A DNA stretch of 62,040 nucleotides, filler included, from Platydemus manokwari (lineage: Eukaryota): NCBI GenBank assembly GCA_037951405.1. It is 4 parts of 4 records of this genome, joined end to end, with 100 filler letters (N's around TTAATTAATTAA, not from the genome) between each part and the next. Parts side by side here need not be neighbours in the genome. Positions count along the whole stretch, not along the records: positions 39,654 to 51,366 come from JBBMOY010503331.1; 3 more parts are not named here. The stretch is one strand, 5' to 3'. This document shows positions 39,654 through 51,366 of the stretch, in pieces. Under the pieces are notes generated by a model, which was given only the letters and a program-made list of their open reading frames with translations, did not search any database and was not told the origin of the DNA. Position numbers and translations under genes: made by a program. The stretch's first letter is position 1, and the number at the start of each line of letters is the position of its first letter.

Positions 39654-40227
39654 ATTTGAACAATATTGGTACTGCACGAGAAACAATAATTATTGCCGGA
39701 GGCTCGAATGAATACTGGATGATTTGTTTGTTAACTTGGAGTTGAATCCCTAATGGAATATTTGGACTGAAATCCCGAATGAAATATTTGAGCTGAATTC
39801 CGATCGAAATATTGAGCTGATATCCCGAATGAATTATTTGACTTAATAATGTCGTTGACTTTGTGTGTCGTGAGAAATTGTGGCAAAAATACTGAATTTT
39901 ACTTCAGTATTTATATGGATTTGAAATGTGGACGAATCATTAATTTTGTTCCTGATTTGTGGGTTTCGTTAGTAATATCCACCGTTGTCATGGTATTTGT
40001 ATTTAAATTTGAATTTCTATAGCTATATTTTGGATTGGCATGGCAACGTGGATTAATAATTTGTTGAAAAAATTTTATATCTATTATTAATATCATTCCG
40101 CCCAGACGCCTACATTTTAATTAATGTGGGTTTTCGGTTTTAATTATTATTATTATTATGTAGTTTTAATTATTATTATCATTATGTAGTTTATAGGCTT
40201 GCAGCCTGCATGGGTATCATCCCGACA
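39654..40227 (-). repeat. Putative 3' LTR, truncated by the contig end, containing four ~26-bp tandem repeats at about 39733-39843
   Basis: Starts TG at 40227 directly after the PPT. The internal repeat unit is about GAGCTGAAATCCCGAATGAAATATTT. Confidence 0.68.
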
Positions 40228-40239
40228 TATCTCCCCCCC
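40228..40239 (-). other. Polypurine tract (plus-strand primer)
   Basis: GGGGGGGAGATA immediately 5' of TG. A G7 run is exceptional in this AT-rich DNA. Confidence 0.75.
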
Positions 40240-40490
40240 ACTTTTAGATTTTCGTCCCGAAAATTAGAACAGGAGAAAAAAGGAGGTAGGGTCACAACAA
40301 CTTTTACATAAAATAAATTAATGAATACAGTTTACAATTAAATCGTGAAATTACAGCATACAAGCACAGAATTGATTATCACAAAGATAAAGAGTAAAGA
40401 TAATTGTCAATGATTCACAACAGATTTAATGATAATTGTCAAAAATATGAGTCAAATAACACGAATCACGATAGTTGATAGCCCCGATCC

Positions 40491-42135
40491 TCATTTTCTG
40501 TCATCTGTGAGATCCACTGTGTCCTCGTCCTCCCCTCCTGTTAGGTCCATTAAGACTCTGGTTCCAGATGTTTCCTCCACTGATGTTGCTTTCAGATTTG
40601 GGTTCCTATACTCTAGAAACATAGTTTTCTTTGTTTTCTTGTCAGTGTAGTGGACACCTGTAATGTGCCATTCATAATCGCCTTCCTTAATTACTTTGGC
40701 TATTTTCTCCGGTACTTTTGTTTTCTTGGGATACGGCTTGTTTCGTTTTGGTATCTTTGGTATCGACCAGATGCTTCTTTTTTCAGAAGTAGATTGTAAT
40801 TAGTTGGATGTGCTTGGACCGTATTCTTCAGAGTCTATCTACTTCCATTGGATTAAATTTCTTGCTCTCCTTTTCTGGATGCTTCTTTTTGTGCATACTG
40901 GCTGGGAGAGTGGGTGCCATGATTGGGTCTAATTTTGTTAATACGACTCTGGGCAAAGTGGCCGCATTAATTGTCTGTAGCACTGGTGCTGATGGAACAT
41001 TTTTTTCTGGTTGACTAATAGCTTGATGAGTTTGTTCCTCATCTATGACTAAGTCGCCCATTAATTCGTCTTCTTCTATTTTCATTGGGTGTTCTGTTAC
41101 ATTCTGCACTTGATCTTGCCAGGTTGGTTCCAAATTTAAATAGAGTTGCCTTATGGTCTTTGCATTATTCTCCCTTAAAAGGTCCGAAAGCCTGTCTGGA
41201 ACGTAATTAGGCATAACGGCCTTGCATATCTTTGCCCATTTATATGCTTTGCTAGTGACAAAACCCTTGCTGGCTAAGTTTTGTGCTCTTGCCATATCAC
41301 GGATGCCAATTAGATGATCCGGGTTGATCCCGCATGCTTCTAGTGCATCCGTTATCTTGTATCCGATTATTACCTTTCCTTGAGTAATCTCTCTCAGCTT
41401 ATGTTGACAGAGGATTTCGTTCCACTGTCCTATGATGTTCTTTTCCGTGATGACGTCTGTACCGTCATTTTTCCAATGTCGGACTCGTCGCCGGGGTGCG
41501 ACTCTAGAGTTTATTATTATATTTCCCTGGTAGTTTAGTACCGTGATTGCTACTAGGGAATTTTCGGTTTCCTGCCGTGTCGTCATATTCGCGGTAGCGA
41601 CCATGCGCGCACTTAGGAATAGAATTTTGCTTCGGAGTTCCATTTCCGTCATAGGCATTTTGATAAAAGAATGATACAGGTTCACTTCTTTGAGTGAAAT
41701 TGGTACATTTGGTGTGTGCGTTGTAAAGGGTACATATGGTAGGTACTCATCTCTCTCTTTCGATCACGAGTGTGGTTGTTGGCATTAGAATTTCCACTTG
41801 AGCCTTGGGCAACCTCTGATTACACTCGGTAATTTCCAGGGTTTGGAAGGGGGACATCTCGATGAGCTGATCAAGTGTACCCATCCAGATTGTGATAGGT
41901 TCCCCAGCAGTGTGCAAGTAGCTATGTTGACGTCTCCATGCACCTACTATCCAGTATATTTGCTGGTAGAGCGTCTGAGAGTTGGATGCGGAGGCAAACG
42001 TTTGTGCTTTGTCTCAGAAGACCCTCAATTTGTAAGCTGTGAAATAGAAAATCCCGAGCGTGAATGGTTCTCGCATAATTGATCTATGTCTCCGGTAGTG
42101 TAGATAATATTCAAGAGCGCATCTGATTGTGATCT
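40491..42135 (-). pseudogene. Cargo gene B: unknown N-terminal domain + REX4/ISG20-like exonuclease fold + disordered tail ending in two SIM-like motifs (about 545 codons reconstructed)
   Basis: Track ORF 40828..41685 has ILFLSARMV, AITVLNYQGNIIINSRVAP, QGKVIIGYKITDAL, IGIRDMA and NNAKTIRQLY. It extends 5' across a frameshift in an (AG)n run (LRVF*DK..ASNS..HTAGEPITIW..TTLVIE) and 3' across frameshifts to ...RVLMDLTGGEDEDTVDLTDDRK*. Confidence 0.8.
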
Positions 42136-42699
42136 CCTAATATTTAATGGTTCACCTCCAGTATGAAACCCTTCAGTATCAGATTGTCCATTAAGTTATG
42201 AACATTAGGTAATAAAACAATATATGATAAAAACCATACTTTCCTTGCACTGAATATTTCTTCTATGTAAGATTATATGAAAATTGATCGTCAAATGCAA
42301 AATTAGGTGGTGATTCAAGTATATTATAATCCTCTTAATTTGGTAATACTAGATTTATAGATTAAAAATAGTTTTTTTCAATATTATGGGAAGATTATTA
42401 AATTTGGAATTATGTCGAATTTTAAATTGAAAAGTCTTTGAAACAATTTCATAATAACTAGCTTGAAACTTAGTTTGATTTTGATAAAATACTACTATGA
42501 TTTTACCCTCGGATCACTGTTGTCTTAATCAGTCTCTGGCGAGTTCTAATCAAGCCCAAGGTAATCCTTAAACCTTATATTTATTTATTATTTCACCTCG
42601 CAATCAAATCTACATGAAGATAGAAATGATTGGCAACAATGATCCAAAAGGGGTAATTTAATTCTATCAGTCTCGATTATTTTATAACTTTTTATGCCT

Positions 42700-43150
42700 C
42701 TATTATCGATCTACAACGTAACTCTTCTTTATAGCTAAACTTTTTTTAATATATAAAAGCAAAATTACAGTTTGCAATACTAATATACACCAAAATAAAA
42801 AGTTGGATCAACGGCTAAACCTACAATTCAAATGATTGCAGTTAATACGTCCTTCTCTTGGAGTAAAACCGAATACCAACGATGTTTTTCAGCACAGTTC
42901 TATAATAATATATTAGGCGATACGTACTATAATTTCAATAAGTTTGTTACAAAACAATCTAACTCACTACTTAAAATGATAATATGGTATTGATATGTTC
43001 TGTTGTCGAGCAAATCTTCTACAAAATTCGAGTGATTCGGCTTAATAGTGAAGTTTCCGCACTATGTAATCTAGTGGTTTCAATAATGGGGCGAGTTCTG
43101 ATGTTTCGAACTCCTATTTATATGGTTTTTATTTGTCGCACTTAAATGCT
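42700..43150 (-). pseudogene. Heavily decayed ORF remnant between cargo genes A and B
   Basis: Coding-like frame EFETSELAPLLKPLDYIVRKLHY*AESLEFCRRFARQQNISIPYYHFK*. No family recognised. Confidence 0.25.
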
Positions 43151-43791
43151 TAAAATCGTACATGATATTTTAATTCCTCAAGGATTTTCCAAATATTAAC
43201 TATTATTTTCTTTTAACTATGGAATGTTATTGCCAAGGATATTATTAATAATATTTAAACTCTTTTCTTTAAATATTGTTTCCCTTAAATTTTATTTTAT
43301 TTTATTATAATTTATGTTTTTTGATGCCATTACAAGTAAACTATATATAAAAGTAATCTATATATTTTTATAATATTAATACTTTATTAATATTTTTATA
43401 ATATTAATATGTAATTAATATTTTTCATTAGATATTAATCCTTCATCTGGAATTCATGAACAAAATTGATACAATTGACAACATGACAAATGTATCGAAA
43501 AATGATTAATACATCGCCTCAATATTTGGTCGATGTTACTTAAAATATAATGATACATTTCAATGTATCAAACCTAACTTTTTAGCCGTGACATAATTGT
43601 TTTTTGTTACATATCCTAATTAACGCTATTATTATTATAAAACTTGGTTTTAATTACTTTTATACATTAATATGAATGACTAAATTTATACATCTATAAA
43701 CAGCTTAATCACTTTTATACGTTTATATGAATTATTAGAGATAAGACACAGAAATAAAATTAATAAGAAAAGTATTATTCATACAAAATTG

Positions 43792-45542
43792 CTAAAGTTT
43801 CAATGTTATTTTTCTACTTGGCCCAATCCCCAACACTACTGGGGGACTGATGAAGCATATCCCCATGCTTTTCTTTTTTGAAGACTCATCGGGGCTGTCG
43901 AATCTTTTTCTTTTCCTTCCTTCCGTCTCGGCTGGCTGGCTATTTGTATTTATCCACAACTCTCCTGGGATAAATTCTTTTGCATTGGGATTCAAGTTAG
44001 AATTTTTGACGATGTCCTGATGGATATATTCTTCTGCATCTCGCCATAACTGCTCGAATTCCTCTTCTTTTTCCTTTACTCCCATCTGCTCTTCAATTAT
44101 AGATTCCTACCATAGCTGTTATAAAGATCTTTCCAAAGTAAGCTTATAATCCTCACAGTCTATATCATTATCTGGTTCCATTTCTTTTTCTGGTCGCTGG
44201 ATTTTGTTAAAATGATTAATTACTTGACCTTTTTCGACTCGTTCGTTGTCCTTTAAAATCTTAAATTCTCGGATATTATTTTTCCAGAGTTTATTTCTTT
44301 TGTTTTCAAGCAGCTGCTCTTCTGCTGACTTGAGTTTCCATGTCTGGTTTTTTGCTCTGATAACTGTATTTTCATTTAATAATTCTCTGTCCACCCATTC
44401 GAATATATTGGTGGCCTCGTTTATTATTTCTTGTCCTTCTTGAATTTTCCTTTTCCATCTGGTCTCATCGTTATCATCTCCTTTATCTTGCCAGTTTGAT
44501 TCAATTTTTTGATATATGTTCATCACTTCATCCAGCTCGTCGCTTCAATTTTCGTGTTGTGGCATTTTTCTTCCCACAATAGCCGCATGCATTTCTTTTA
44601 AGTTTTTACTTAGAAAATACCGGCTTTTTTTTCATCTCTTCTTCTACAGCGATTGAGCCTTTTAATTCTCTCACTCCGAGTACTTCTTCAAGGTAGATTG
44701 ATACCGCTTTCAATTTTCTCTTCATGTCGTAGCCAACTAGTATTTTCCCTTTTGTGATTTCTATTACTTTTCTGCTCGCGTGTCCTGCATCTATGGTCCC
44801 CCTGATTACTGTTTCTGCAGTGTGAGACTTGTTTTCCTGATAATGCTTGATCTCCGATCTTGGGGAGCATATTTGATTAAAAATATCCTCTCTCTTGAAA
44901 TTTTTCAGACATATCCACACTGGATATTCCTTGTTGTTGAAGTTAATGGCGTATTTTGCATCAAAATAGACGATCAACTCTATGATTTCTTGTTGGTTCA
45001 TCGGAGTGATGTTTCTCATGAATGACATTTCCTTTTTTGGTTGTAAGAATGGTAGATTCTGGAGGTTAAATATTTGTGGCTCCCTAAACTCCACTGGCTC
45101 TAACTGGTTGGGCTCCACCAGTTCGATCATTATGGTATATGGGATAGACTTTGATTTTATTCTTATTTGGGAATACTCATTCTGGAAATTCGGCCTGCCT
45201 TGCGGTTTTAAATAGATAGAAATTGATGATTGTGACTCCAGATCAATTTTTTCCCAGAATATTCTATGAGGATATCCGATTGTACATTGTGAATTTTTAT
45301 TCTTGTGGGGCGAATTGAAGTGCTGGCAATATTTCTTTGATTTTAAACCCTCCTTGTTCTTGCGAATGGAGAATAATTACAGATCTCTTTGACTGAGACG
45401 CCGTCTTTAGATTATTTGGGATGTGGGTTACATCTGAGAACACTCTTCTTTCTATGCCAAACGGTGTCTTTCTGACTGCCGCACGAATGGCTGTATAGAA
45501 TCTTCTAGGGTAGAATTGAATGATGCTAGTTGCAGGTTCCAT
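43792..45542 (-). pseudogene. Cargo gene A: same N-terminal domain + exonuclease fold + tail with PAM2 motif and basic NLS (about 580 codons reconstructed)
   Basis: Track ORFs 45297..45542, 44606..45130, 44119..44526 and 43792..44085 join through two frameshifts and three stops. Motifs: IVYFDAKYA, IFNQICSP, KGKILVGYD, VLGVREL, SKNLKEMHAAIVG, VMNIYQKIESNWQD, SNLNPNAKEFIPG, RKRKR. Confidence 0.8.
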
Positions 45543-45550
45543 TACTATTA

Positions 45551-45670
45551 CTGAGATGTTAAAATTGATGTTAAAACTAATGGGGAAAACTCTTACCTTT
45601 GACGTTGTTGATCGAGAGTTTTTTCGTAAAAAATTATGACTATTGTCAGCTAGGGGGTCGTTTTTATATA
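45551..45670 (-). promoter_or_regulatory. Candidate internal promoter (TATATAAA at about 45670-45663) and 46-nt 5'-UTR intron (45596-45551) of cargo gene A
   Basis: AAG|GTAAGA...TTTTAACATCTCAG| ends 8 nt before the ATG at 45542. The length equals that of the host RPL23A intron. Confidence 0.5.
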
Positions 45671-46730
45671 TAATTTTAGCGCTCGATTTTGATTGGCTAA
45701 ATTTGTATGGACAATTTTCTCATTGGGTAGGATTTTTGGGGTAATTTTCTTATTGGTTAATTCATTTTCTTTTATTATTTCATCCGTTGGGAATTTTCTA
45801 AAAATATTAATTACATCAAACAAAATACCATGCTTGATTTTATATTTACAAAATTTAAATACTGTATGCATTCCTTGAAATAAAAGATTACTATTATGTT
45901 TACATAAATTGAAACCATTAAATACAATTTATACATCAAATTCTGGTATTTACATAAATTGTTTTCGTTTATTTCCCTCAAGTAACTATTAAATTCAAAA
46001 TCAAGGCTATTTATATACATATTTATTTTTTGTTCACATTGACACATATAAATTGATTAAAATTAAATAATTAGAAATTTTACAGCTAAACCTTTCTATA
46101 TACATATTGATTTTATCCTGCTATAAGTTGACTTCCTATACACGAGGGTTATCCCTATAATATTTTTTATACAGTTTATAACTTATGTACATCATCATTA
46201 TGGTGGTCAAGCTAGAGATTACTGCTCCAATTAGTATTACATTTAGGGTGATTTCATTTTGGGGTTTTTACTACTAATGGGGGTTATACTACTATTAATT
46301 AATGTTCTCATGATTTTTGTCGTTGTTTTACTAATGGGTTTTGTTGTTGTCTTTCTTACAAGGGGTTCTAACGTTATTTGTTCTCGATGAATTATGAACT
46401 TGGGATTGCTTTTTTCATAATACCAGAAATATATATTTACAGGGTTTTTGATGTCAACATTCCGGGTGATCATTCCTTCTGTGGAGTTTATATAATAACG
46501 ATGTTCATTTAAATGCACTTTTACTTTAAAACACTTTAGATCATCCCAAATGATTTTAATTTGATCTAGCATTTTTCGATGAATATTTTTCGGGGTAACT
46601 CGGGGATTTGTACTATCATTGTTGTAACATCATTTCCTTTTCTTATTTCTCGCTGATAGATTCTAGCTGCACATTCCAAAAAGGTAAAGAGCTTGACAAT
46701 GAAATGATATTGTTATTAACGATTAAACAT
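45650..46730 (-). pseudogene. Cargo gene D: candidate type-I membrane protein (possibly env-like), decayed
   Basis: A hydrophobic N-terminal stretch (HFIVKLFTFLECAA), an ectodomain-like ORF 46243..46572 with a Thr/Ser-rich stalk (KTTTKPISKTTTK), then a hydrophobic segment LYLMVSIYVNIIVIFYF and a basic tail, spread over several frames. Confidence 0.35.
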
Positions 46731-46749
46731 GCAAACTTCTGAGGTATCT

Positions 46750-47370
46750 TGCCTTAGTCCAGAAATTCATTCAACTTTGGAGAATCTCTTAGGATCATAT
46801 ATCTTAATTTTTATTTCATTTGATCGTGAATAATTTTGGTTCTCTTATCTCCTTATTTGTTTACGGTTTGTTGCCTTCTGGTAATATTGATTGAGGTTTT
46901 ACAATTTCCTTTCTGGGTACTTGGTGTTTTTTGTATTTGCTTAATATTATTTTTGACTATTTGTTAGGTTTTTGGTTTGATTTCTTCTTTTTCCTCGTCT
47001 ATTGTTTTTTCCTTTACTTTCTATCATCCGAATAATATGTGTTTGTTACACATGCGAGGTGATTATTTTATTCTAGCTCTATTATTTTCTCAGGTTTTAT
47101 GAATTTTCCTCACATGATAAGATGCTAGAGTCTTGATGTTATATATTCCATTACTTCCCCTGTCACTCGCCTCCGTAAATATTAGCGTGATTGATAATTC
47201 TTTCAAGCCACTTAAATATTCTGAAGATTTAACTAATTGACATTTAAGTTCAAAATACCAAATCGCAATTTTTAAAAATTTGATAATATAAGCTTGATAT
47301 TCAAACAAGTCAGAAGGATTTAGAATCTGTTTACTTACCTGGACTCCAACAAATAAAGTTTGTTGCTGCT
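46750..47370 (-). pseudogene. Cargo gene E: 5'-truncated third paralog of the exonuclease-fold family
   Basis: QTLFVGVQ..DLFEYQAYIIKFLK..SEYLSGLKELS..NIKTLASYHVRKIHKT*EN aligns with LGVREL/IGIRDM and NAKTIRQLYLNLEPTWQD, with TGA at the conserved Trp. Confidence 0.55.
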
Positions 47371-47880
47371 ATGTATCACTGCTATATAAAATATAAATAT
47401 TGCAAATATTATATACGCTGGTATTTATTGTAGAAATACAGAGTTAAAACAAAGTAAAACAATACTGTTTATTGAATTAAAACAAATAATTTAAAAGACA
47501 AAATTAATTTATACAGTGTAGCCTAGTGTGTACGCACTTTGGTACCATAAAATATGGCAATACCGTTAACGTACTTTATATAATAATTATAATTGATTAT
47601 AATATAAAAATTATTTTTAATTAATTATCAGATTGAACTACGATCATCCATCATATGCGTAGCTCAATCTGTCATTCATTATGAATTGGATTTTCATTCT
47701 CCAACAGAATTTATCCTGACAGCAATGATAGGTCGAGATTTATTGCTTGTCAGCGCTTTTAAACCCCGTTGGGTTCTGCGTGAATTTTAAGCAACAATAT
47801 AGTAACCTTGGGTTTTGGATCACTTGATGAATTGGTCTCAAAATTATTATATGCACAGATAGTTATTTTCTAGATTTCTT

Positions 47881-48068
47881 TTAGTCCTATCTGTCTCTGG
47901 TTCAGGCACTGATGAGACACATGAAAGGCCGAAATATAAAACTATCTGCATCACAAAACCACCATTATCGTCTTCGCAGCCATCGTTCATAAAGTTTCCG
48001 CCAGATCGTCCTATATATCTCTGAACCGGGATACTGATGAGACCTATGGAGGGCCGAAATAGGACTAA
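47881..48068 (+). ncRNA. Tandem (double) hammerhead ribozyme
   Basis: Two CUGAUGA boxes (47909-47915, 48034-48040), each followed by a 15-nt G...C-closed stem II and GAAA (47931-47934, 48056-48059). NUH sites are AUC at 47889-47891 and AUA at 48013-48017. Stem III pairs TTAGTCCTA with TAGGACTAA, and stem I pairings are available. Confidence 0.85.
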
Positions 48069-49152
48069 TTTTTCAAAAAAGGTAGTTTATTCATTTAGTT
48101 ATTTATTTGTTTATTGTATCTTGACCGCTTAACACAAACAATAACAATTGAAACAAAACAATAAAATGAATATGACTGATTTAAACATGAATTTAGACCA
48201 TGGGCAGATAAATAACAAAACTCCATTATGGACACAAAATAACCTCAATGTAACAATAAAGCGCTTGCTGCCTGGGTGACTGGACAAGCATTTCTACAAA
48301 AAGGAAAGTGGGGGACCAAAAGGGAATTCTTAACAAATTTTAAAAGACCGCGAGGCTAAAAGTAGCCATGAATCTGTAATTAATTACAATGATAATAAGA
48401 AATTAACTCATCTTGGCTTGAAATACTTTCAGAATAATTGTAATAATGAATATCGAAACCGAATAAAATGATCATCAATAATAATTGATTTCAATCAAAA
48501 ATTTTAATAAATTTCTTGAACTAATATTGAATGCCAAATATTGTATTTCATAGCTGCATCGATTACCAAGAGAAATACGATATTGATTTCAATTTATCTG
48601 AGAATTAAATCGATTTTATTAAACTAAATATCTCCGGCAGGTCAATTTACAGCGAATATTTTGCAAGTTTTATAGAATCAAGTTAACAATAATCAATTTT
48701 AAAAGGATTAATGTTCATGGTTCACATGTTAAGCAGGAAGAATTTATAAACAATCACCGACAAGAAATTATTAGAAAACACCAACATAAAATCACAAATA
48801 TTTGAATTGGAATAAAATACATATTTTATTGACTTTTATGTAACATAATCAGAACCAAGAGAACATTGATACCATGCACAATGAGAATGAAAACCTAAAC
48901 ACAACATATACTCTGAAACTAGATTATCATTATCATTATTATTATTTTCATTTAGTTAATAATATTTTATATTTGTCTTTATTGAATTTTAAAATACAGA
49001 TAACCGATAATCAATAAAAAATAGAATAACGATAATAAATATTACAATTACAAATGACATAAATATTTAGTCAAGCTAATATACATTTCGATGTTACCAT
49101 TGTTAATTGCATTCATTTTAAATTCTTGATCGAGTCTGAACACGGAAATTCA

Positions 49153-49668
49153 TTATTTCAATTCTGACAATGCATCAGCACATTCTTCTTGTTTTAATGA
49201 AAGTCTCTTGATAATCTTCGTTAAACTAACTTCGACTTTCGCTGCAGGATTGTTTCGACATTTTTCATTGGATAACTTCCTTATTTTCGCTAAGTACGGT
49301 TTCGAATCACTAATTCTTTTTTCCACAGACTCACGAACTAATGGTGGTAACGTACTAAATTTTAATGAAGACTTGGTTTTCTTCGACGCAATGCTCGGAT
49401 TTCTATGTTTATTAATCAATAATCGTCTAGCCAATTGAATACTGTTAGTCACTTTGTAATCGGTAAATGATCCATCTACTCGTCGAAAATCATCAACACG
49501 TTCCATTTCAGATTCTTGTTTATTGATCAAATTGTAATCTCGAATCTTTGCTGTAATTCGATTGAAATACTTTTCTATTTCCAATTGTTCAAGATTAACA
49601 TATTCTCGAAAGAGTTCGCGATTTCTTTTTGATTTCGATTGTTGTTCTTCTATTAAAATCGATTTCAT
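49153..49668 (-). CDS. Hypothetical basic, coiled-coil-rich protein (about 171 aa), single exon
   Basis: Long uninterrupted ORF with protein-like composition in very AT-rich DNA. An in-frame TAG lies just upstream of the ATG. No recognised domain. Confidence 0.5.
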   Translation of the reverse strand: MKSILIEEQQSKSKRNRELFREYVNLEQLEIEKYFNRITAKIRDYNLINKQESEMERVDDFRRVDGSFTDYKVTNSIQLARRLLINKHRNPSIASKKTKSSLKFSTLPPLVRESVEKRISDSKPYLAKIRKLSNEKCRNNPAAKVEVSLTKIIKRLSLKQEECADALSELK

Positions 49669-51366
49669 CAACTACTTAAAATGATCATATGGCGAATATC
49701 TTAAAAATTGATTATCAGTTTTACTACACAAAATTGTGCCATCTCTCGCCATCGAATCGAGTAACTCAATGAAACTAATCTCAATTCATTAATCAGGTAA
49801 TTTGACTCGTTTGATCGGCATCCATTTTATAAGCGATTTTTTAATGATTTCCGAAATTAGAAATGCTTTCAGAAAATCGGATCGAGAAAAATTGATTTGA
49901 CGAAGGATAAAATTGTTTAATAAACCTATTACAATTGGTAAACTCAATATTTTGGTTCTTAATTGAAAAAACAAGATTACTACTGCGTCTTATTAAATTT
50001 TATATAAAACACAATGATCTTTTGAAAGTGATAAGATCAATAAAATCTAATAATCTTACATAACAAGACCAAACATTAAAGATCTGTTAATCAAAATGAG
50101 GCAGTGATAAATATTTTATTAATTAAAATTTAATAATTCACGAAAATGCGATCGAGTGAGCGATATTAAGATTCTGTTTACTCACCAAAATTCAATCATA
50201 GCGATTGTTATAATTTACAATTAGCCACATCATTAGGAGTAGTTAGTAGAGACTTTAAAGCTTCTAAAATTGAATTTAATATAAAAGAAACTAGAAAATA
50301 TTATGAAAATTTTGATTCGAGGAAATTACAAGTTGTATTGATTTGACTTGGAAACAAAAATTATCGAAAATAATTATGAAGCAACCATTAATAAATTTTG
50401 CTATTTAGTGCAGGATTATTAAAACGTGAGTCATTTGAAGACTCGGCTAATGACGAGCAAGTTAAAAGAAATGTACAGTGAAAACAATTTTTTAAAAATT
50501 TATGTGGGTTGGAATGTACATTCTGAACCTCAATGTCACAGGAATCTAAATTTTATTGTCAGTGTATAGGATTCGGTTTCAAGATAAATAACATTCAGTG
50601 CATAATTTGCATGAATTCCAGATTCAGGATTTATGTTGTGATTGGTTTGAAGTGAAAAAAATAGTCTAGCTGATATTATGCTATAAAGGTATTTCAAAAA
50701 TGTAAGATTACAAATAAAATGAAATTCAGTAAAATAAGAAAATAAATAAAATAAAAAATTAAGTGAAAATAAAGGCGTAGACTTTTAAGAATCAAATGAG
50801 CTTGTGAATAAAAATGACGTGCTAATTTCGAAACAAATAAATTTCAATGTTTTATATTATTAGAAAAAGAAGATTTGATTGATATATACTACCCGTTAAA
50901 GATTCTTCCTATTTGACAGTGTGGGACACGAAAAAATGGTAAACTTTAAAGTAATTTTAATAAATTACAATGTTTAAGGTGGTGTACTCATTGTTCCAGT
51001 AGCAATAGATAAATAGCATAATCACAATAATATCAATAATTAATAGCACAAATAAAAAATAGAGGCAACTTTATTTATAAAAAATATCCAATTTGAAATA
51101 AAAATTCTCTTTTTTTTAATATATACAAGTGAAAATAATTCTAAAAATAGTAACTGGTACAGTTGAGATAGTTTTTGTTCAGTTATCATTGAGGAAATCT
51201 GTGATGCTGTCCTGCAGGCATTTAATCCATCTAATAGCAATAAATAAAAATGAGGTATATTTAGGGAAAAATATAATATAAACGATAATGAACAATAATA
51301 ATTTTAATGATAATCTTAATAATTATTATAAAGTAATAAAAATGAAATTTATAATAATAAAATTTG

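What the first reader, a model, noticed from the sequence alone, without database searches (positions are those of the whole stretch)
39654..47370. LTR element carrying a tandem family of exonuclease-fold genes with swappable host-binding tails: a candidate anti-silencing toolkit
Seen: upstream of a PPT+TG boundary lie three paralogous (pseudo)genes (A 43792-45542, B 40491-42135, E 46750-47370) and a candidate membrane-protein gene, all on one strand. A and B share a REX4/ISG20-like fold and also an unrecognised N-terminal domain (RVFSD..ASQS / RVF*D..ASNS; TIGYPHRIFW / TAGEPITIWM; PYTIMIE / TTTLVIE). They are very diverged in sequence, implying old duplications kept in frame. Established: typical LTR elements carry gag/pol with or without env, and giant cargo-rich LTR elements (Burro) have been reported from the planarian Schmidtea mediterranea. 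Inference: this is a multigene accessory module that manipulates host RNA turnover and chromatin silencing. I know of no description of such a family but cannot exclude one.
Basis: partly seen in the sequence, partly recalled or inferred. Interest (0 to 1): 0.9.

Follow-up and report, generated by a model that had tools for sequence, protein, structure and literature searches.

The report
Decayed retroelement tail with dead exonuclease genes
The piece holds two broken, catalytically dead copies of an ISG20-like exonuclease gene that, in intact relatives elsewhere, always sits just behind the polymerase gene of a giant virus-like jumping element; the gene family seems undescribed, but this particular locus is a relic.

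Summary
Genes A and B (minus strand) are real paralogues, 25% identical over about 120 residues. Both belong to a family of about 500-residue proteins with three parts: an N-terminal beta domain, a REX4/ISG20-type DEDDh exonuclease domain and a variable tail. A profile of 38 relatives matches ISG20L2 at E=1e-32, and a model of B superposes on ISG20L2 and ISG20 (TM about 0.8).

In all six contigs of 5 kb or more that I fetched, the family gene lies 190-300 nt behind a Ty3/gypsy pol, or behind one small ORF that follows pol. Two of these contigs carry an uninterrupted gag-env-pol polyprotein, the architecture published for planarian Burro elements. A polypurine tract followed by TGT lies downstream of B and is conserved in relatives, so B is the last gene before a 3' LTR.

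- A and B are both broken, not kept in frame.
- Both lack the catalytic residues.
- Paralogue E and the membrane-protein gene are not confirmed.
- The piece contains no pol, no gag and no second LTR.
- The anti-silencing role is untested.

A's tail carries a PAM2 motif above Pfam's threshold. An exonuclease as the third ORF is already known in rotifer elements, but of the DEDDy type, so this is a new variant of a known kind.

The parts
43792..45719 (-). Gene A: a broken copy of the family gene (N-terminal beta domain, ISG20-like exonuclease domain, C-terminal region, PAM2 tail). It has at least 2 frame changes and 1 in-frame stop.
   Evidence: Family HMM hits on four minus-strand pieces cover profile positions 21-83, 128-309 and 341-452 of 506. 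The IPNxLK motif is present.
44663..45004 (-). Core of A's exonuclease-like domain, the part alignable to B. Of the catalytic columns this piece covers, it keeps D at the first and has K at the second and third.
   Evidence: BLASTP to B; hmmalign to the family profile.
43963..44007 (-). PAM2 (PABP-interacting) motif in A's tail.
   Evidence: Pfam PF07145, 26.1 bits against a gathering score of 20, E=5.8e-6. Absent from 136 relatives.
40491..42135 (-). Gene B: a broken copy of the family gene with at least 1 frame change. It contains a 311-residue open piece covering the exonuclease-like domain. The tail ends in an acidic, SUMO-interaction-like stretch (judged by eye only).
   Evidence: Family HMM E=1e-53 (profile 166-386) and E=9e-6 (profile 76-146); break count; tail translation.
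41116..41658 (-). B's ISG20-like exonuclease fold. All five catalytic positions are replaced (S, R, A, L, N).
   Evidence: AlphaFold gives pLDDT above 90 over residues 10-190. Foldseek finds ISG20L2 7yw5 (TM 0.79) and ISG20 1wlj (TM 0.78). Catalytic columns.
40225..40260 (-). Conserved motif before the LTR: TCGGGRCG, then a purine-rich tract, then GGAGRTATGT. This is the polypurine tract plus the first bases of the 3' LTR.
   Evidence: Sequence; alignment with L002, L003 and L006 downstream of their family genes; pattern matches.
39654..40227 (-). Putative 3' LTR. It starts with TGT and is cut by the edge of the piece. It holds two short tandem-repeat arrays of 26-nt period.
   Evidence: Its position follows the conserved polypurine tract. 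Tandem repeats. No second copy in the piece, so its identity as an LTR is inferred.

Best explanation
The piece is the decayed 3' end of a Burro-like Ty3/gypsy LTR retroelement, or of two juxtaposed remnants of such elements.

Shown:
- In intact relatives, one gag-env-PR-RT-RNaseH-IN polyprotein is followed by a separate accessory gene of about 500 residues. A polypurine tract and the 3' LTR come next.
- The accessory protein has a cupin-like N-terminal beta domain, a REX4/ISG20-type DEDDh 3'-5' exonuclease domain and a fast-evolving disordered tail.
- B is the copy that sits in the canonical last-gene position. A is a second, very diverged copy 1.6 kb upstream.
- Both copies are pseudogenes as they stand.
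- Both belong to the part of the family that has lost the catalytic residues.

Inferred:
- In active elements the intact-site versions act as 3'-5' exoribonucleases on element or host RNA 3' ends.
- The dead-site versions remain as intact ORFs beside intact pol in L006 and L007. They probably act as RNA 3'-end or protein-binding adaptors.
- A's PAM2 tail points to docking on poly(A)-binding protein.
For: - Paralogy of A and B.
- The family is large and real: 107 cluster representatives at E<=1e-3 and 51 at E<=1e-10, typically 450-560 residues.
- Homology to the DEDDh clade: ISG20L2 E=1.3e-32, ISG20 3e-21, SDN1 9e-17. Pfam RNase_T matches 27 of 53 members. Fold matches.
- Linkage to pol on the same strand, 190-300 nt upstream, or with one small ORF between in L007: L001, L006, L007, L008, L009, L010. 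L004 has the same small ORF as L007.
- The pols are 43-56% identical to each other, so they form one lineage.
- L008 and L010 carry uninterrupted polyproteins of 2871 and 3108 residues. Both have Monjiviricetes_fusion, protease, RT, RNase H and integrase; L008 also has a weak capsid hit. This matches the in-frame env described for Burro (PMC6431247).
- The polypurine tract plus TGT is conserved between the window and relatives whose proteins are only about 20% identical.
- Catalytic columns: 26 of 38 relatives keep D-E-D/E-H-D and 12 of 38 have lost them. A and B have lost them.
- Break counts.
Against: - The piece itself has no pol, gag or env remnant in 11.1 kb upstream of the LTR start.
- It has no second LTR, and no PBS or target-site duplication could be tested.
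- All six relatives examined carry one copy, not two.
- The nearest database relatives of A and B are only 30-33% identical, so membership of the same element lineage rests on profile homology plus the polypurine-tract motif.
- The source organism is unknown.
- Some frame changes could be assembly indel errors.
- Any function of the protein is untested.
Confidence: 0.75

Rival explanations
1. A and B come from two separate insertions. In this reading A is a leftover of an older element of a different subfamily. B belongs to a younger, 5'-truncated or internally deleted element that ended up next to it. The 'tandem family' would then be a mosaic of the genome's repeat graveyard, not a designed module.
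For: - All six relatives examined have a single copy.
- A and B are not each other's closest relatives. A is nearest P0001; B groups with P0002 and P0011.
- A is more AT-rich (GC 0.34-0.39 against 0.40-0.45 for B) and has more breaks, as expected if it is older.
- The spacer between them is 20-30% GC and non-coding.
Against: - No polypurine tract or LTR start follows A.
- Both copies share strand and order.
- Published Burro elements have about 10 kb of internal sequence beyond the polyprotein, with accessory ORFs (PMC6431247), so a two-gene accessory region is possible.
Confidence: 0.4
2. One reading: a currently working multigene accessory module whose exonuclease proteins and swappable tails manipulate host RNA turnover and chromatin silencing.
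For: - A's tail has a PAM2 motif.
- B's tail has an acidic, SUMO-interaction-like stretch, judged by eye.
- SDN1, which degrades small RNAs, is among the closest structures.
- Dead-site relatives stay intact beside intact pol, which suggests a selected function that does not need catalysis.
Against: - Both copies here are broken and lack the catalytic residues.
- The third paralogue and the membrane-protein gene are not found.
- PAM2 occurs in 0 of 136 relatives.
- There are no expression or interaction data.
Confidence: 0.1
3. A and B are host genes: paralogues of cellular REX4/ISG20L2, possibly with introns. On this reading they are domesticated or never were part of a mobile element.
For: - The domain is homologous to cellular exonucleases.
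- No pol lies in the piece.
Against: - Relatives are uninterrupted ORFs that always lie behind pol.
- The pieces of A and B abut in different frames without the insertions an intron would leave in profile coordinates.
- A conserved polypurine tract plus TGT follows B.
- The N-terminal domain is specific to the family and absent from ISG20-type PDB entries.
Confidence: 0.05

Closest known systems
DEDDy-type exonuclease ORF3 of bdelloid rotifer Juno and Vesta LTR retrotransposons and Athena/Terminon elements (Rodriguez et al. 2017, PMC5408684)
   Same: - A DnaQ-superfamily 3'-5' exonuclease encoded as a separate ORF behind pol in gypsy-like LTR elements.
- No transmembrane or coiled-coil features.
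- The third acidic residue is often E; the paper reports 'DEED', and here 14 of 26 intact members have E.
- Function unknown.
   Different: - The rotifer ORFs are reported as RNase D-like DEDDy. This family has His at the motif III position in 26 of 38 members.
- It matches Pfam RNase_T and the ISG20, ISG20L2 and SDN1 structures.
- It also has an N-terminal beta domain and frequent loss of the active site.
- I could not compare sequences directly.
Burro / GYPSM1 giant gypsy-like LTR retrotransposons of planarians (Arkhipova and Yushenova 2019, PMC6431247)
   Same: - Relatives L008 and L010 have env (mononegavirus-type fusion protein) in frame between gag and pol. The review calls this arrangement the first such case.
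- They carry accessory ORFs.
- The DNA is AT-rich.
- Decaying copies with stops and frameshifts are reported in Dugesia japonica.
   Different: - The review lists many Burro domains (MATH, BIR, BCL2, SUMO-like, dUTPase, midasin) but no exonuclease ORF.
- The polyproteins here are 2871-3108 residues, against 4873-5140 in Burro.
- I had no Burro sequence and did not establish the source organism of the window.
Cellular REX4 / ISG20 / ISG20L2 / SDN1 DEDDh exoribonucleases
   Same: Same fold and clear profile homology. Most family members keep all five catalytic residues.
   Different: - The cellular enzymes lack the N-terminal beta domain.
- They are not linked to pol.
- A and B have lost the catalytic residues.
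Catalytically inactive DEDD derivatives that keep RNA binding (Maelstrom, EXD1; cited in the discussion of PMC5408684)
   Same: An exonuclease fold retained after loss of the active site. This is a plausible model for the dead-site members that remain intact ORFs (P0033, P0022).
   Different: They are host piRNA-pathway proteins of other DEDD subfamilies. No homology beyond the superfamily was tested or found here.
PAM2-bearing regulators of poly(A) RNA (PF07145 family; from general knowledge PAN3, GW182, Paip and Tob proteins)
   Same: A's tail matches PF07145 above the gathering score.
   Different: It is a short linear motif in a broken gene and is not shared by relatives. Binding to the MLLE domain of poly(A)-binding protein is not shown.

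Membership tests
DEDDh 3'-5' exonuclease, REX4/ISG20 clade (Pfam RNase_T PF00929) | RNase H-like exonuclease fold superposable on ISG20-type structures | tested here: met
   Model of B: 7yw5 TM 0.79, 1wlj TM 0.78. Relative P0005: 1wlj TM 0.84, rmsd 2.1.
DEDDh 3'-5' exonuclease, REX4/ISG20 clade (Pfam RNase_T PF00929) | Significant sequence or profile match to the family | tested here: met
   A and B alone give no Pfam hit. The A+B profile gives E=0.008-0.03 to ISG20, SDN1 and ISG20L2. The 38-member profile gives E=1e-32. 27 of 53 members hit RNase_T.
DEDDh 3'-5' exonuclease, REX4/ISG20 clade (Pfam RNase_T PF00929) | Five catalytic residues D, E, D, H, D | tested here: not met
   B has S, R, A, L, N. 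A has D, K, K, and the last two columns fall outside that piece. 26 of 38 relatives keep them. A and B are therefore homologues but not competent enzymes.
Ty3/gypsy LTR retroelement, Burro-like | gag, protease, RT, RNase H and integrase present in the element | tested here: not met
   None in the piece: tblastn with four relatives' pols and Pfam on open frames. Present upstream of the family gene in L001 and L006-L010.
Ty3/gypsy LTR retroelement, Burro-like | Polypurine tract directly before a 3' LTR that starts with TG | tested here: met
   40225-40260 on the minus strand. Conserved in L002, L003 and L006.
Ty3/gypsy LTR retroelement, Burro-like | Paired LTRs, primer-binding site, target-site duplication | not testable with these tools
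   The LTR runs off the piece at 39654. No second copy lies in the piece and no tRNA-related feature was found. The source genome is not available.
Ty3/gypsy LTR retroelement, Burro-like | env-type fusion protein in frame between gag and pol | tested here: inconclusive
   Seen in relatives L008 and L010 through precomputed Pfam PF24664. It cannot be tested for the window's own element.
Rotifer Juno/Vesta DEDDy ORF3 | RNase D-like DEDDy domain (Tyr in motif III, DNA_pol_A_exo1-type) | tested here: not met
   His occupies the motif III column in 26 of 38 members. The best Pfam family is RNase_T; only one member has a weak DNA_pol_A_exo1 hit at E=0.01.
PAM2 motif (PF07145) | Match to the motif profile above the gathering score | tested here: met
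   26.1 bits against 20, E=5.8e-6, in A's tail only.
PAM2 motif (PF07145) | Binding to the MLLE domain of poly(A)-binding protein | not testable with these tools
   No interaction data are available.
Hammerhead ribozyme (side observation) | Rfam covariance-model score at or above gathering | tested here: not met
   RF00008 scores 13.1 bits against 48.5, E=9.8, for the first copy only. The second copy folds into the three-way junction but with z=-0.4.

The most novel reading that the evidence does not exclude
The family is a widespread, so far undescribed accessory gene of env-bearing Burro-like retroelements. Its repeatedly inactivated versions are kept as intact ORFs because they act as non-catalytic binders of RNA 3' ends. 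Lineage-specific tails such as A's PAM2 would dock them on host factors like poly(A)-binding protein. This would shield element RNA from host deadenylation or small-RNA-guided decay.
Probability: 0.15. Interest if true: 0.8.

Novelty: new variant of a known kind. Interest (0 to 1): 0.55.

Why it matters
Extra genes in LTR retroelements show what such elements need beyond copying themselves. One exonuclease type (DEDDy) is known from rotifer elements. This work adds a second, unrelated exonuclease type (ISG20-like DEDDh) with its own N-terminal domain.

The family is tied to a lineage whose polyprotein carries an in-frame viral fusion protein. It is found in over a hundred sequence clusters from sequencing runs and metagenomes. 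About a third of the full-length members scored (12 of 38) have lost the active site, and two of these (P0033, P0022) were seen as open genes beside an open pol. That is a natural data set for asking what an exonuclease fold does for a retroelement.

ISG20 is a host antiviral nuclease, so an element-borne homologue also bears on host-parasite mimicry. The window's own copies add little beyond their PAM2 tail, because they are relics.

Tried and rejected
- The word-indexed protein search found nothing with B, with the 172-residue ORF at 49156-49671, or with the family alignment (only its first member came back).
- Exact look-up of B's ORF found no record.
- Rfam and tRNA scans of the piece were empty.
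- Pfam gave no hits on all open frames of 55 residues or more outside A and B.
- tblastn of four relatives' pols, the pol C-terminal extension and the small ORFs against the piece found nothing.
- Low-stringency blastn of the putative LTR against the rest of the piece found only AT-rich chance matches.
- A search for a second polypurine-tract motif after A found none.
- The N-terminal domain gave nothing in a PDB profile search. Foldseek gave only weak cupin or AlkB-like hits, E about 1e-3 to 3e-4.
- Looking for paired LTRs in L008 and L010 found none within the stretches held.
- A neighbour-joining tree did not settle whether active-site loss happened once or several times.
- A literature search for the run and sample accessions of the relatives gave no paper, so their host taxa remain unknown.
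- The Schmidtea genome paper was not held in the library.
- No splice model was tested.

Full report
**What is in the piece.** The piece (39654-51366) is AT-rich, with GC 0.20-0.45. A and B share a stretch of about 120 residues at 25% identity, E=2e-12. This is the only protein-level repeat in the piece.

**Paralogue E and the membrane-protein gene.** No open frame of 55 residues or more outside A and B matches any Pfam family. The candidate membrane-protein gene is therefore not supported.

**What the genes are.** Neither A nor B hits Pfam RNase_T directly.
- A two-sequence profile of A and B has ISG20, SDN1 and ISG20L2 as its top three PDB hits, at E=0.008-0.03.
- An exhaustive HMMER search with that profile found 107 cluster representatives at E<=1e-3 and 51 at E<=1e-10. 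Most are 450-560 residues long, with the domain at about residues 155-300.
- A profile of 38 full-length relatives matches ISG20L2 at E=1.3e-32, ISG20 at 3e-21, SDN1 at 9e-17 and PAN2 at about 1e-3.
- 27 of 53 members pass or approach Pfam RNase_T.
- The AlphaFold model of B's 285-residue piece is confident over residues 10-190. It superposes on ISG20L2 (TM 0.79) and ISG20 (TM 0.78).

**Domain layout of the family.** A model of the pol-linked relative P0005 shows four parts:
- a confident beta-rich N-terminal domain (residues 20-145);
- the exonuclease domain (175-355; ISG20 TM 0.84);
- a disordered linker (387-474);
- a small C-terminal beta unit.

The N-terminal domain has only weak cupin or AlkB-like fold hits and no PDB sequence match. 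It is conserved across the family, with an invariant IPNxLK-type motif. It is detectable in A at E=7e-8 and in B at E=9e-6.

**Catalytic state.** I mapped the five ISG20 catalytic positions onto the family profile by coordinates.
- 26 of 38 relatives keep D-E-D/E-H-D and 12 of 38 have lost them.
- B reads S, R, A, L, N. A reads D, K, K, and the last two columns fall outside that piece.
- The nearest relatives of A and B are only 30-33% identical to them, and most of these also lack the active site.
- Two dead-site relatives (P0033, P0022) are intact ORFs next to long uninterrupted pol ORFs. Loss of catalysis therefore does not by itself mean decay in this family.

**State of the copies here.** Both copies are broken.
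- Within the profile-supported parts, A has at least two frame changes and one in-frame stop. B has at least one frame change.
- Relatives are uninterrupted ORFs and no tool predicts introns here. I therefore treated these as breaks, tested no splice model and joined no pieces.
- I cannot exclude that some frame changes are assembly indel errors.

**Link to an LTR retroelement.** The piece itself has no pol, gag, env, second LTR or tRNA-related feature. The link comes from relatives.
- In every contig long enough to show it, the family gene lies on the same strand 190-300 nt downstream of a Ty3/gypsy pol, or of one small ORF that follows pol. These are L001, L006, L007, L008, L009 and L010, carrying five different family proteins.
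- L004 shares L007's small ORF.
- The pols are 43-56% identical to one another, whereas the accessory proteins are about 20-25% identical. This is one element lineage with a fast-evolving accessory gene.
- L008 and L010 carry uninterrupted polyproteins of 2871 and 3108 residues. Both have a Monjiviricetes-type fusion protein, protease, RT, RNase H and integrase; L008 also has a weak capsid hit.
- An env in frame between gag and pol is the feature that Arkhipova and Yushenova describe as unique to planarian Burro elements (PMC6431247).
- None of the polyproteins contains a second exonuclease-like domain.

**The LTR boundary.** On the minus strand, about 250 nt after B's last stop, lies a purine-rich tract followed by TGT.
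- The 36-nt stretch at 40225-40260 aligns with the sequence that follows the family gene in L002, L003 and L006. It includes 9 and 13 consecutive identical bases with L002.
- The proteins of these elements are barely alignable. Conservation of this kind is what a polypurine tract plus integrase attachment site would show.
- B is therefore the last gene before a 3' LTR. That LTR starts at 40227 and runs off the piece.

**A and B: one element or two?** This is unresolved.
- For one element: same strand and order, no polypurine tract or LTR start after A, and the large accessory region reported for Burro.
- For two remnants: single copies in all relatives examined, A and B each closer to different database relatives than to each other, and A being more AT-rich and more broken.

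**Tails.**
- A's last open piece matches the PAM2 motif above Pfam's gathering score (26.1 against 20 bits, E=5.8e-6).
- No PAM2-like pattern occurs in 136 relatives, so the motif is lineage-specific.
- B's tail ends in a hydrophobic and acidic stretch that resembles a SUMO-interaction motif. That is my reading by eye, not a test.

**Mechanism.**
- Shown: the homology, the fold, the position in the element, the loss of active-site residues, the breaks and the PAM2 match.
- Inferred: active-site-bearing members are 3'-5' exoribonucleases that serve the element. They might trim or degrade RNA 3' ends, small RNAs or nucleic-acid by-products.
- Inferred: dead-site members work as binders.
- Inferred: the tails dock on host factors.
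It does not apply to these two copies as they stand.

**Known precedents.**
- Rodriguez et al. 2017 (PMC5408684) describe DEDDy, RNase D-like exonuclease ORF3s in rotifer Juno and Vesta elements and in Athena/Terminons. The kind is therefore known. Like 14 of the 26 intact members here, those have E at the third acidic position.
- This family is DEDDh/ISG20-like and has an extra N-terminal domain.
- I found no paper linking Burro or any LTR element to an ISG20-type gene. The Schmidtea genome paper was not held, so a description in its supplement cannot be excluded.

- Look-ups of relatives P0054 and P0036 returned stretches (L008, L010) that turned out to hold nearly whole env-bearing, provirus-like elements of unknown host. 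I used them only for the tool's gene tables, repeat and pattern scans, a translation of one small downstream ORF in each, and pairwise scores of the polyproteins as they stand.
- I did not fetch the recurrent 15-17.6 kb contigs that carry P0025, P0040 and P0046. I could not tell whether they are genomes of a virus of animals.
- In my working I read ORF end coordinates as printed by the ORF listing, and once remarked on the sequence context next to one break. None of that is repeated here.

Noticed in passing
window 47886-47940 and 48008-48066, + strand: Two direct copies, 125 nt apart, of a hammerhead-like motif with CUGAUGA and GAAA cores. The second copy folds into the three-helix junction of a type III hammerhead: helix III 7 bp, helix I 6 bp, helix II only 3 bp. 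Rfam scores only the first copy and far below threshold (13.1 against 48.5 bits). This may be a relic of a ribozyme-bearing repeat on the strand opposite to A and B.
   Followed up: partly
relatives P0025, P0040 and P0046; not fetched: Three catalytically intact family clusters sit on contigs of very uniform length (15.3-17.6 kb) that recur in many ENA and Logan samples. This looks like complete replicons or full-length elements of unknown nature.
   Followed up: no
L001, L006, L007, L008: C-terminal part of pol: In this lineage the pol ORF continues for about 430-550 residues beyond the integrase core. This extension is not conserved between the elements and has no Pfam match, apart from a weak MLV integrase C-terminal hit in L001.
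   Followed up: partly
L007:2980-3552 and L004:569-1207: A small extra ORF (190 and 212 residues, Arg/Glu-rich) lies between pol and the exonuclease-like gene in two related elements. The two are homologous to each other (E=6e-12) and have no detectable counterpart in the window.
   Followed up: partly
window 49156-49671, - strand: The longest open frame outside A and B (172 residues, charged and possibly helical). It has no Pfam hit and no homologue in the word-indexed protein search, so its nature is unknown.
   Followed up: partly
window 39739-39841 and 40137-40192: Two short tandem-repeat arrays of 26-nt period lie inside the putative 3' LTR.
   Followed up: no
   Followed up: no
protein P0001 (UniParc entry, closest relative of A): This gene model fuses the family protein to a biotin carboxylase N-terminal domain. 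It is probably an annotation merger of an element remnant with a host gene in some annotated genome.
   Followed up: no
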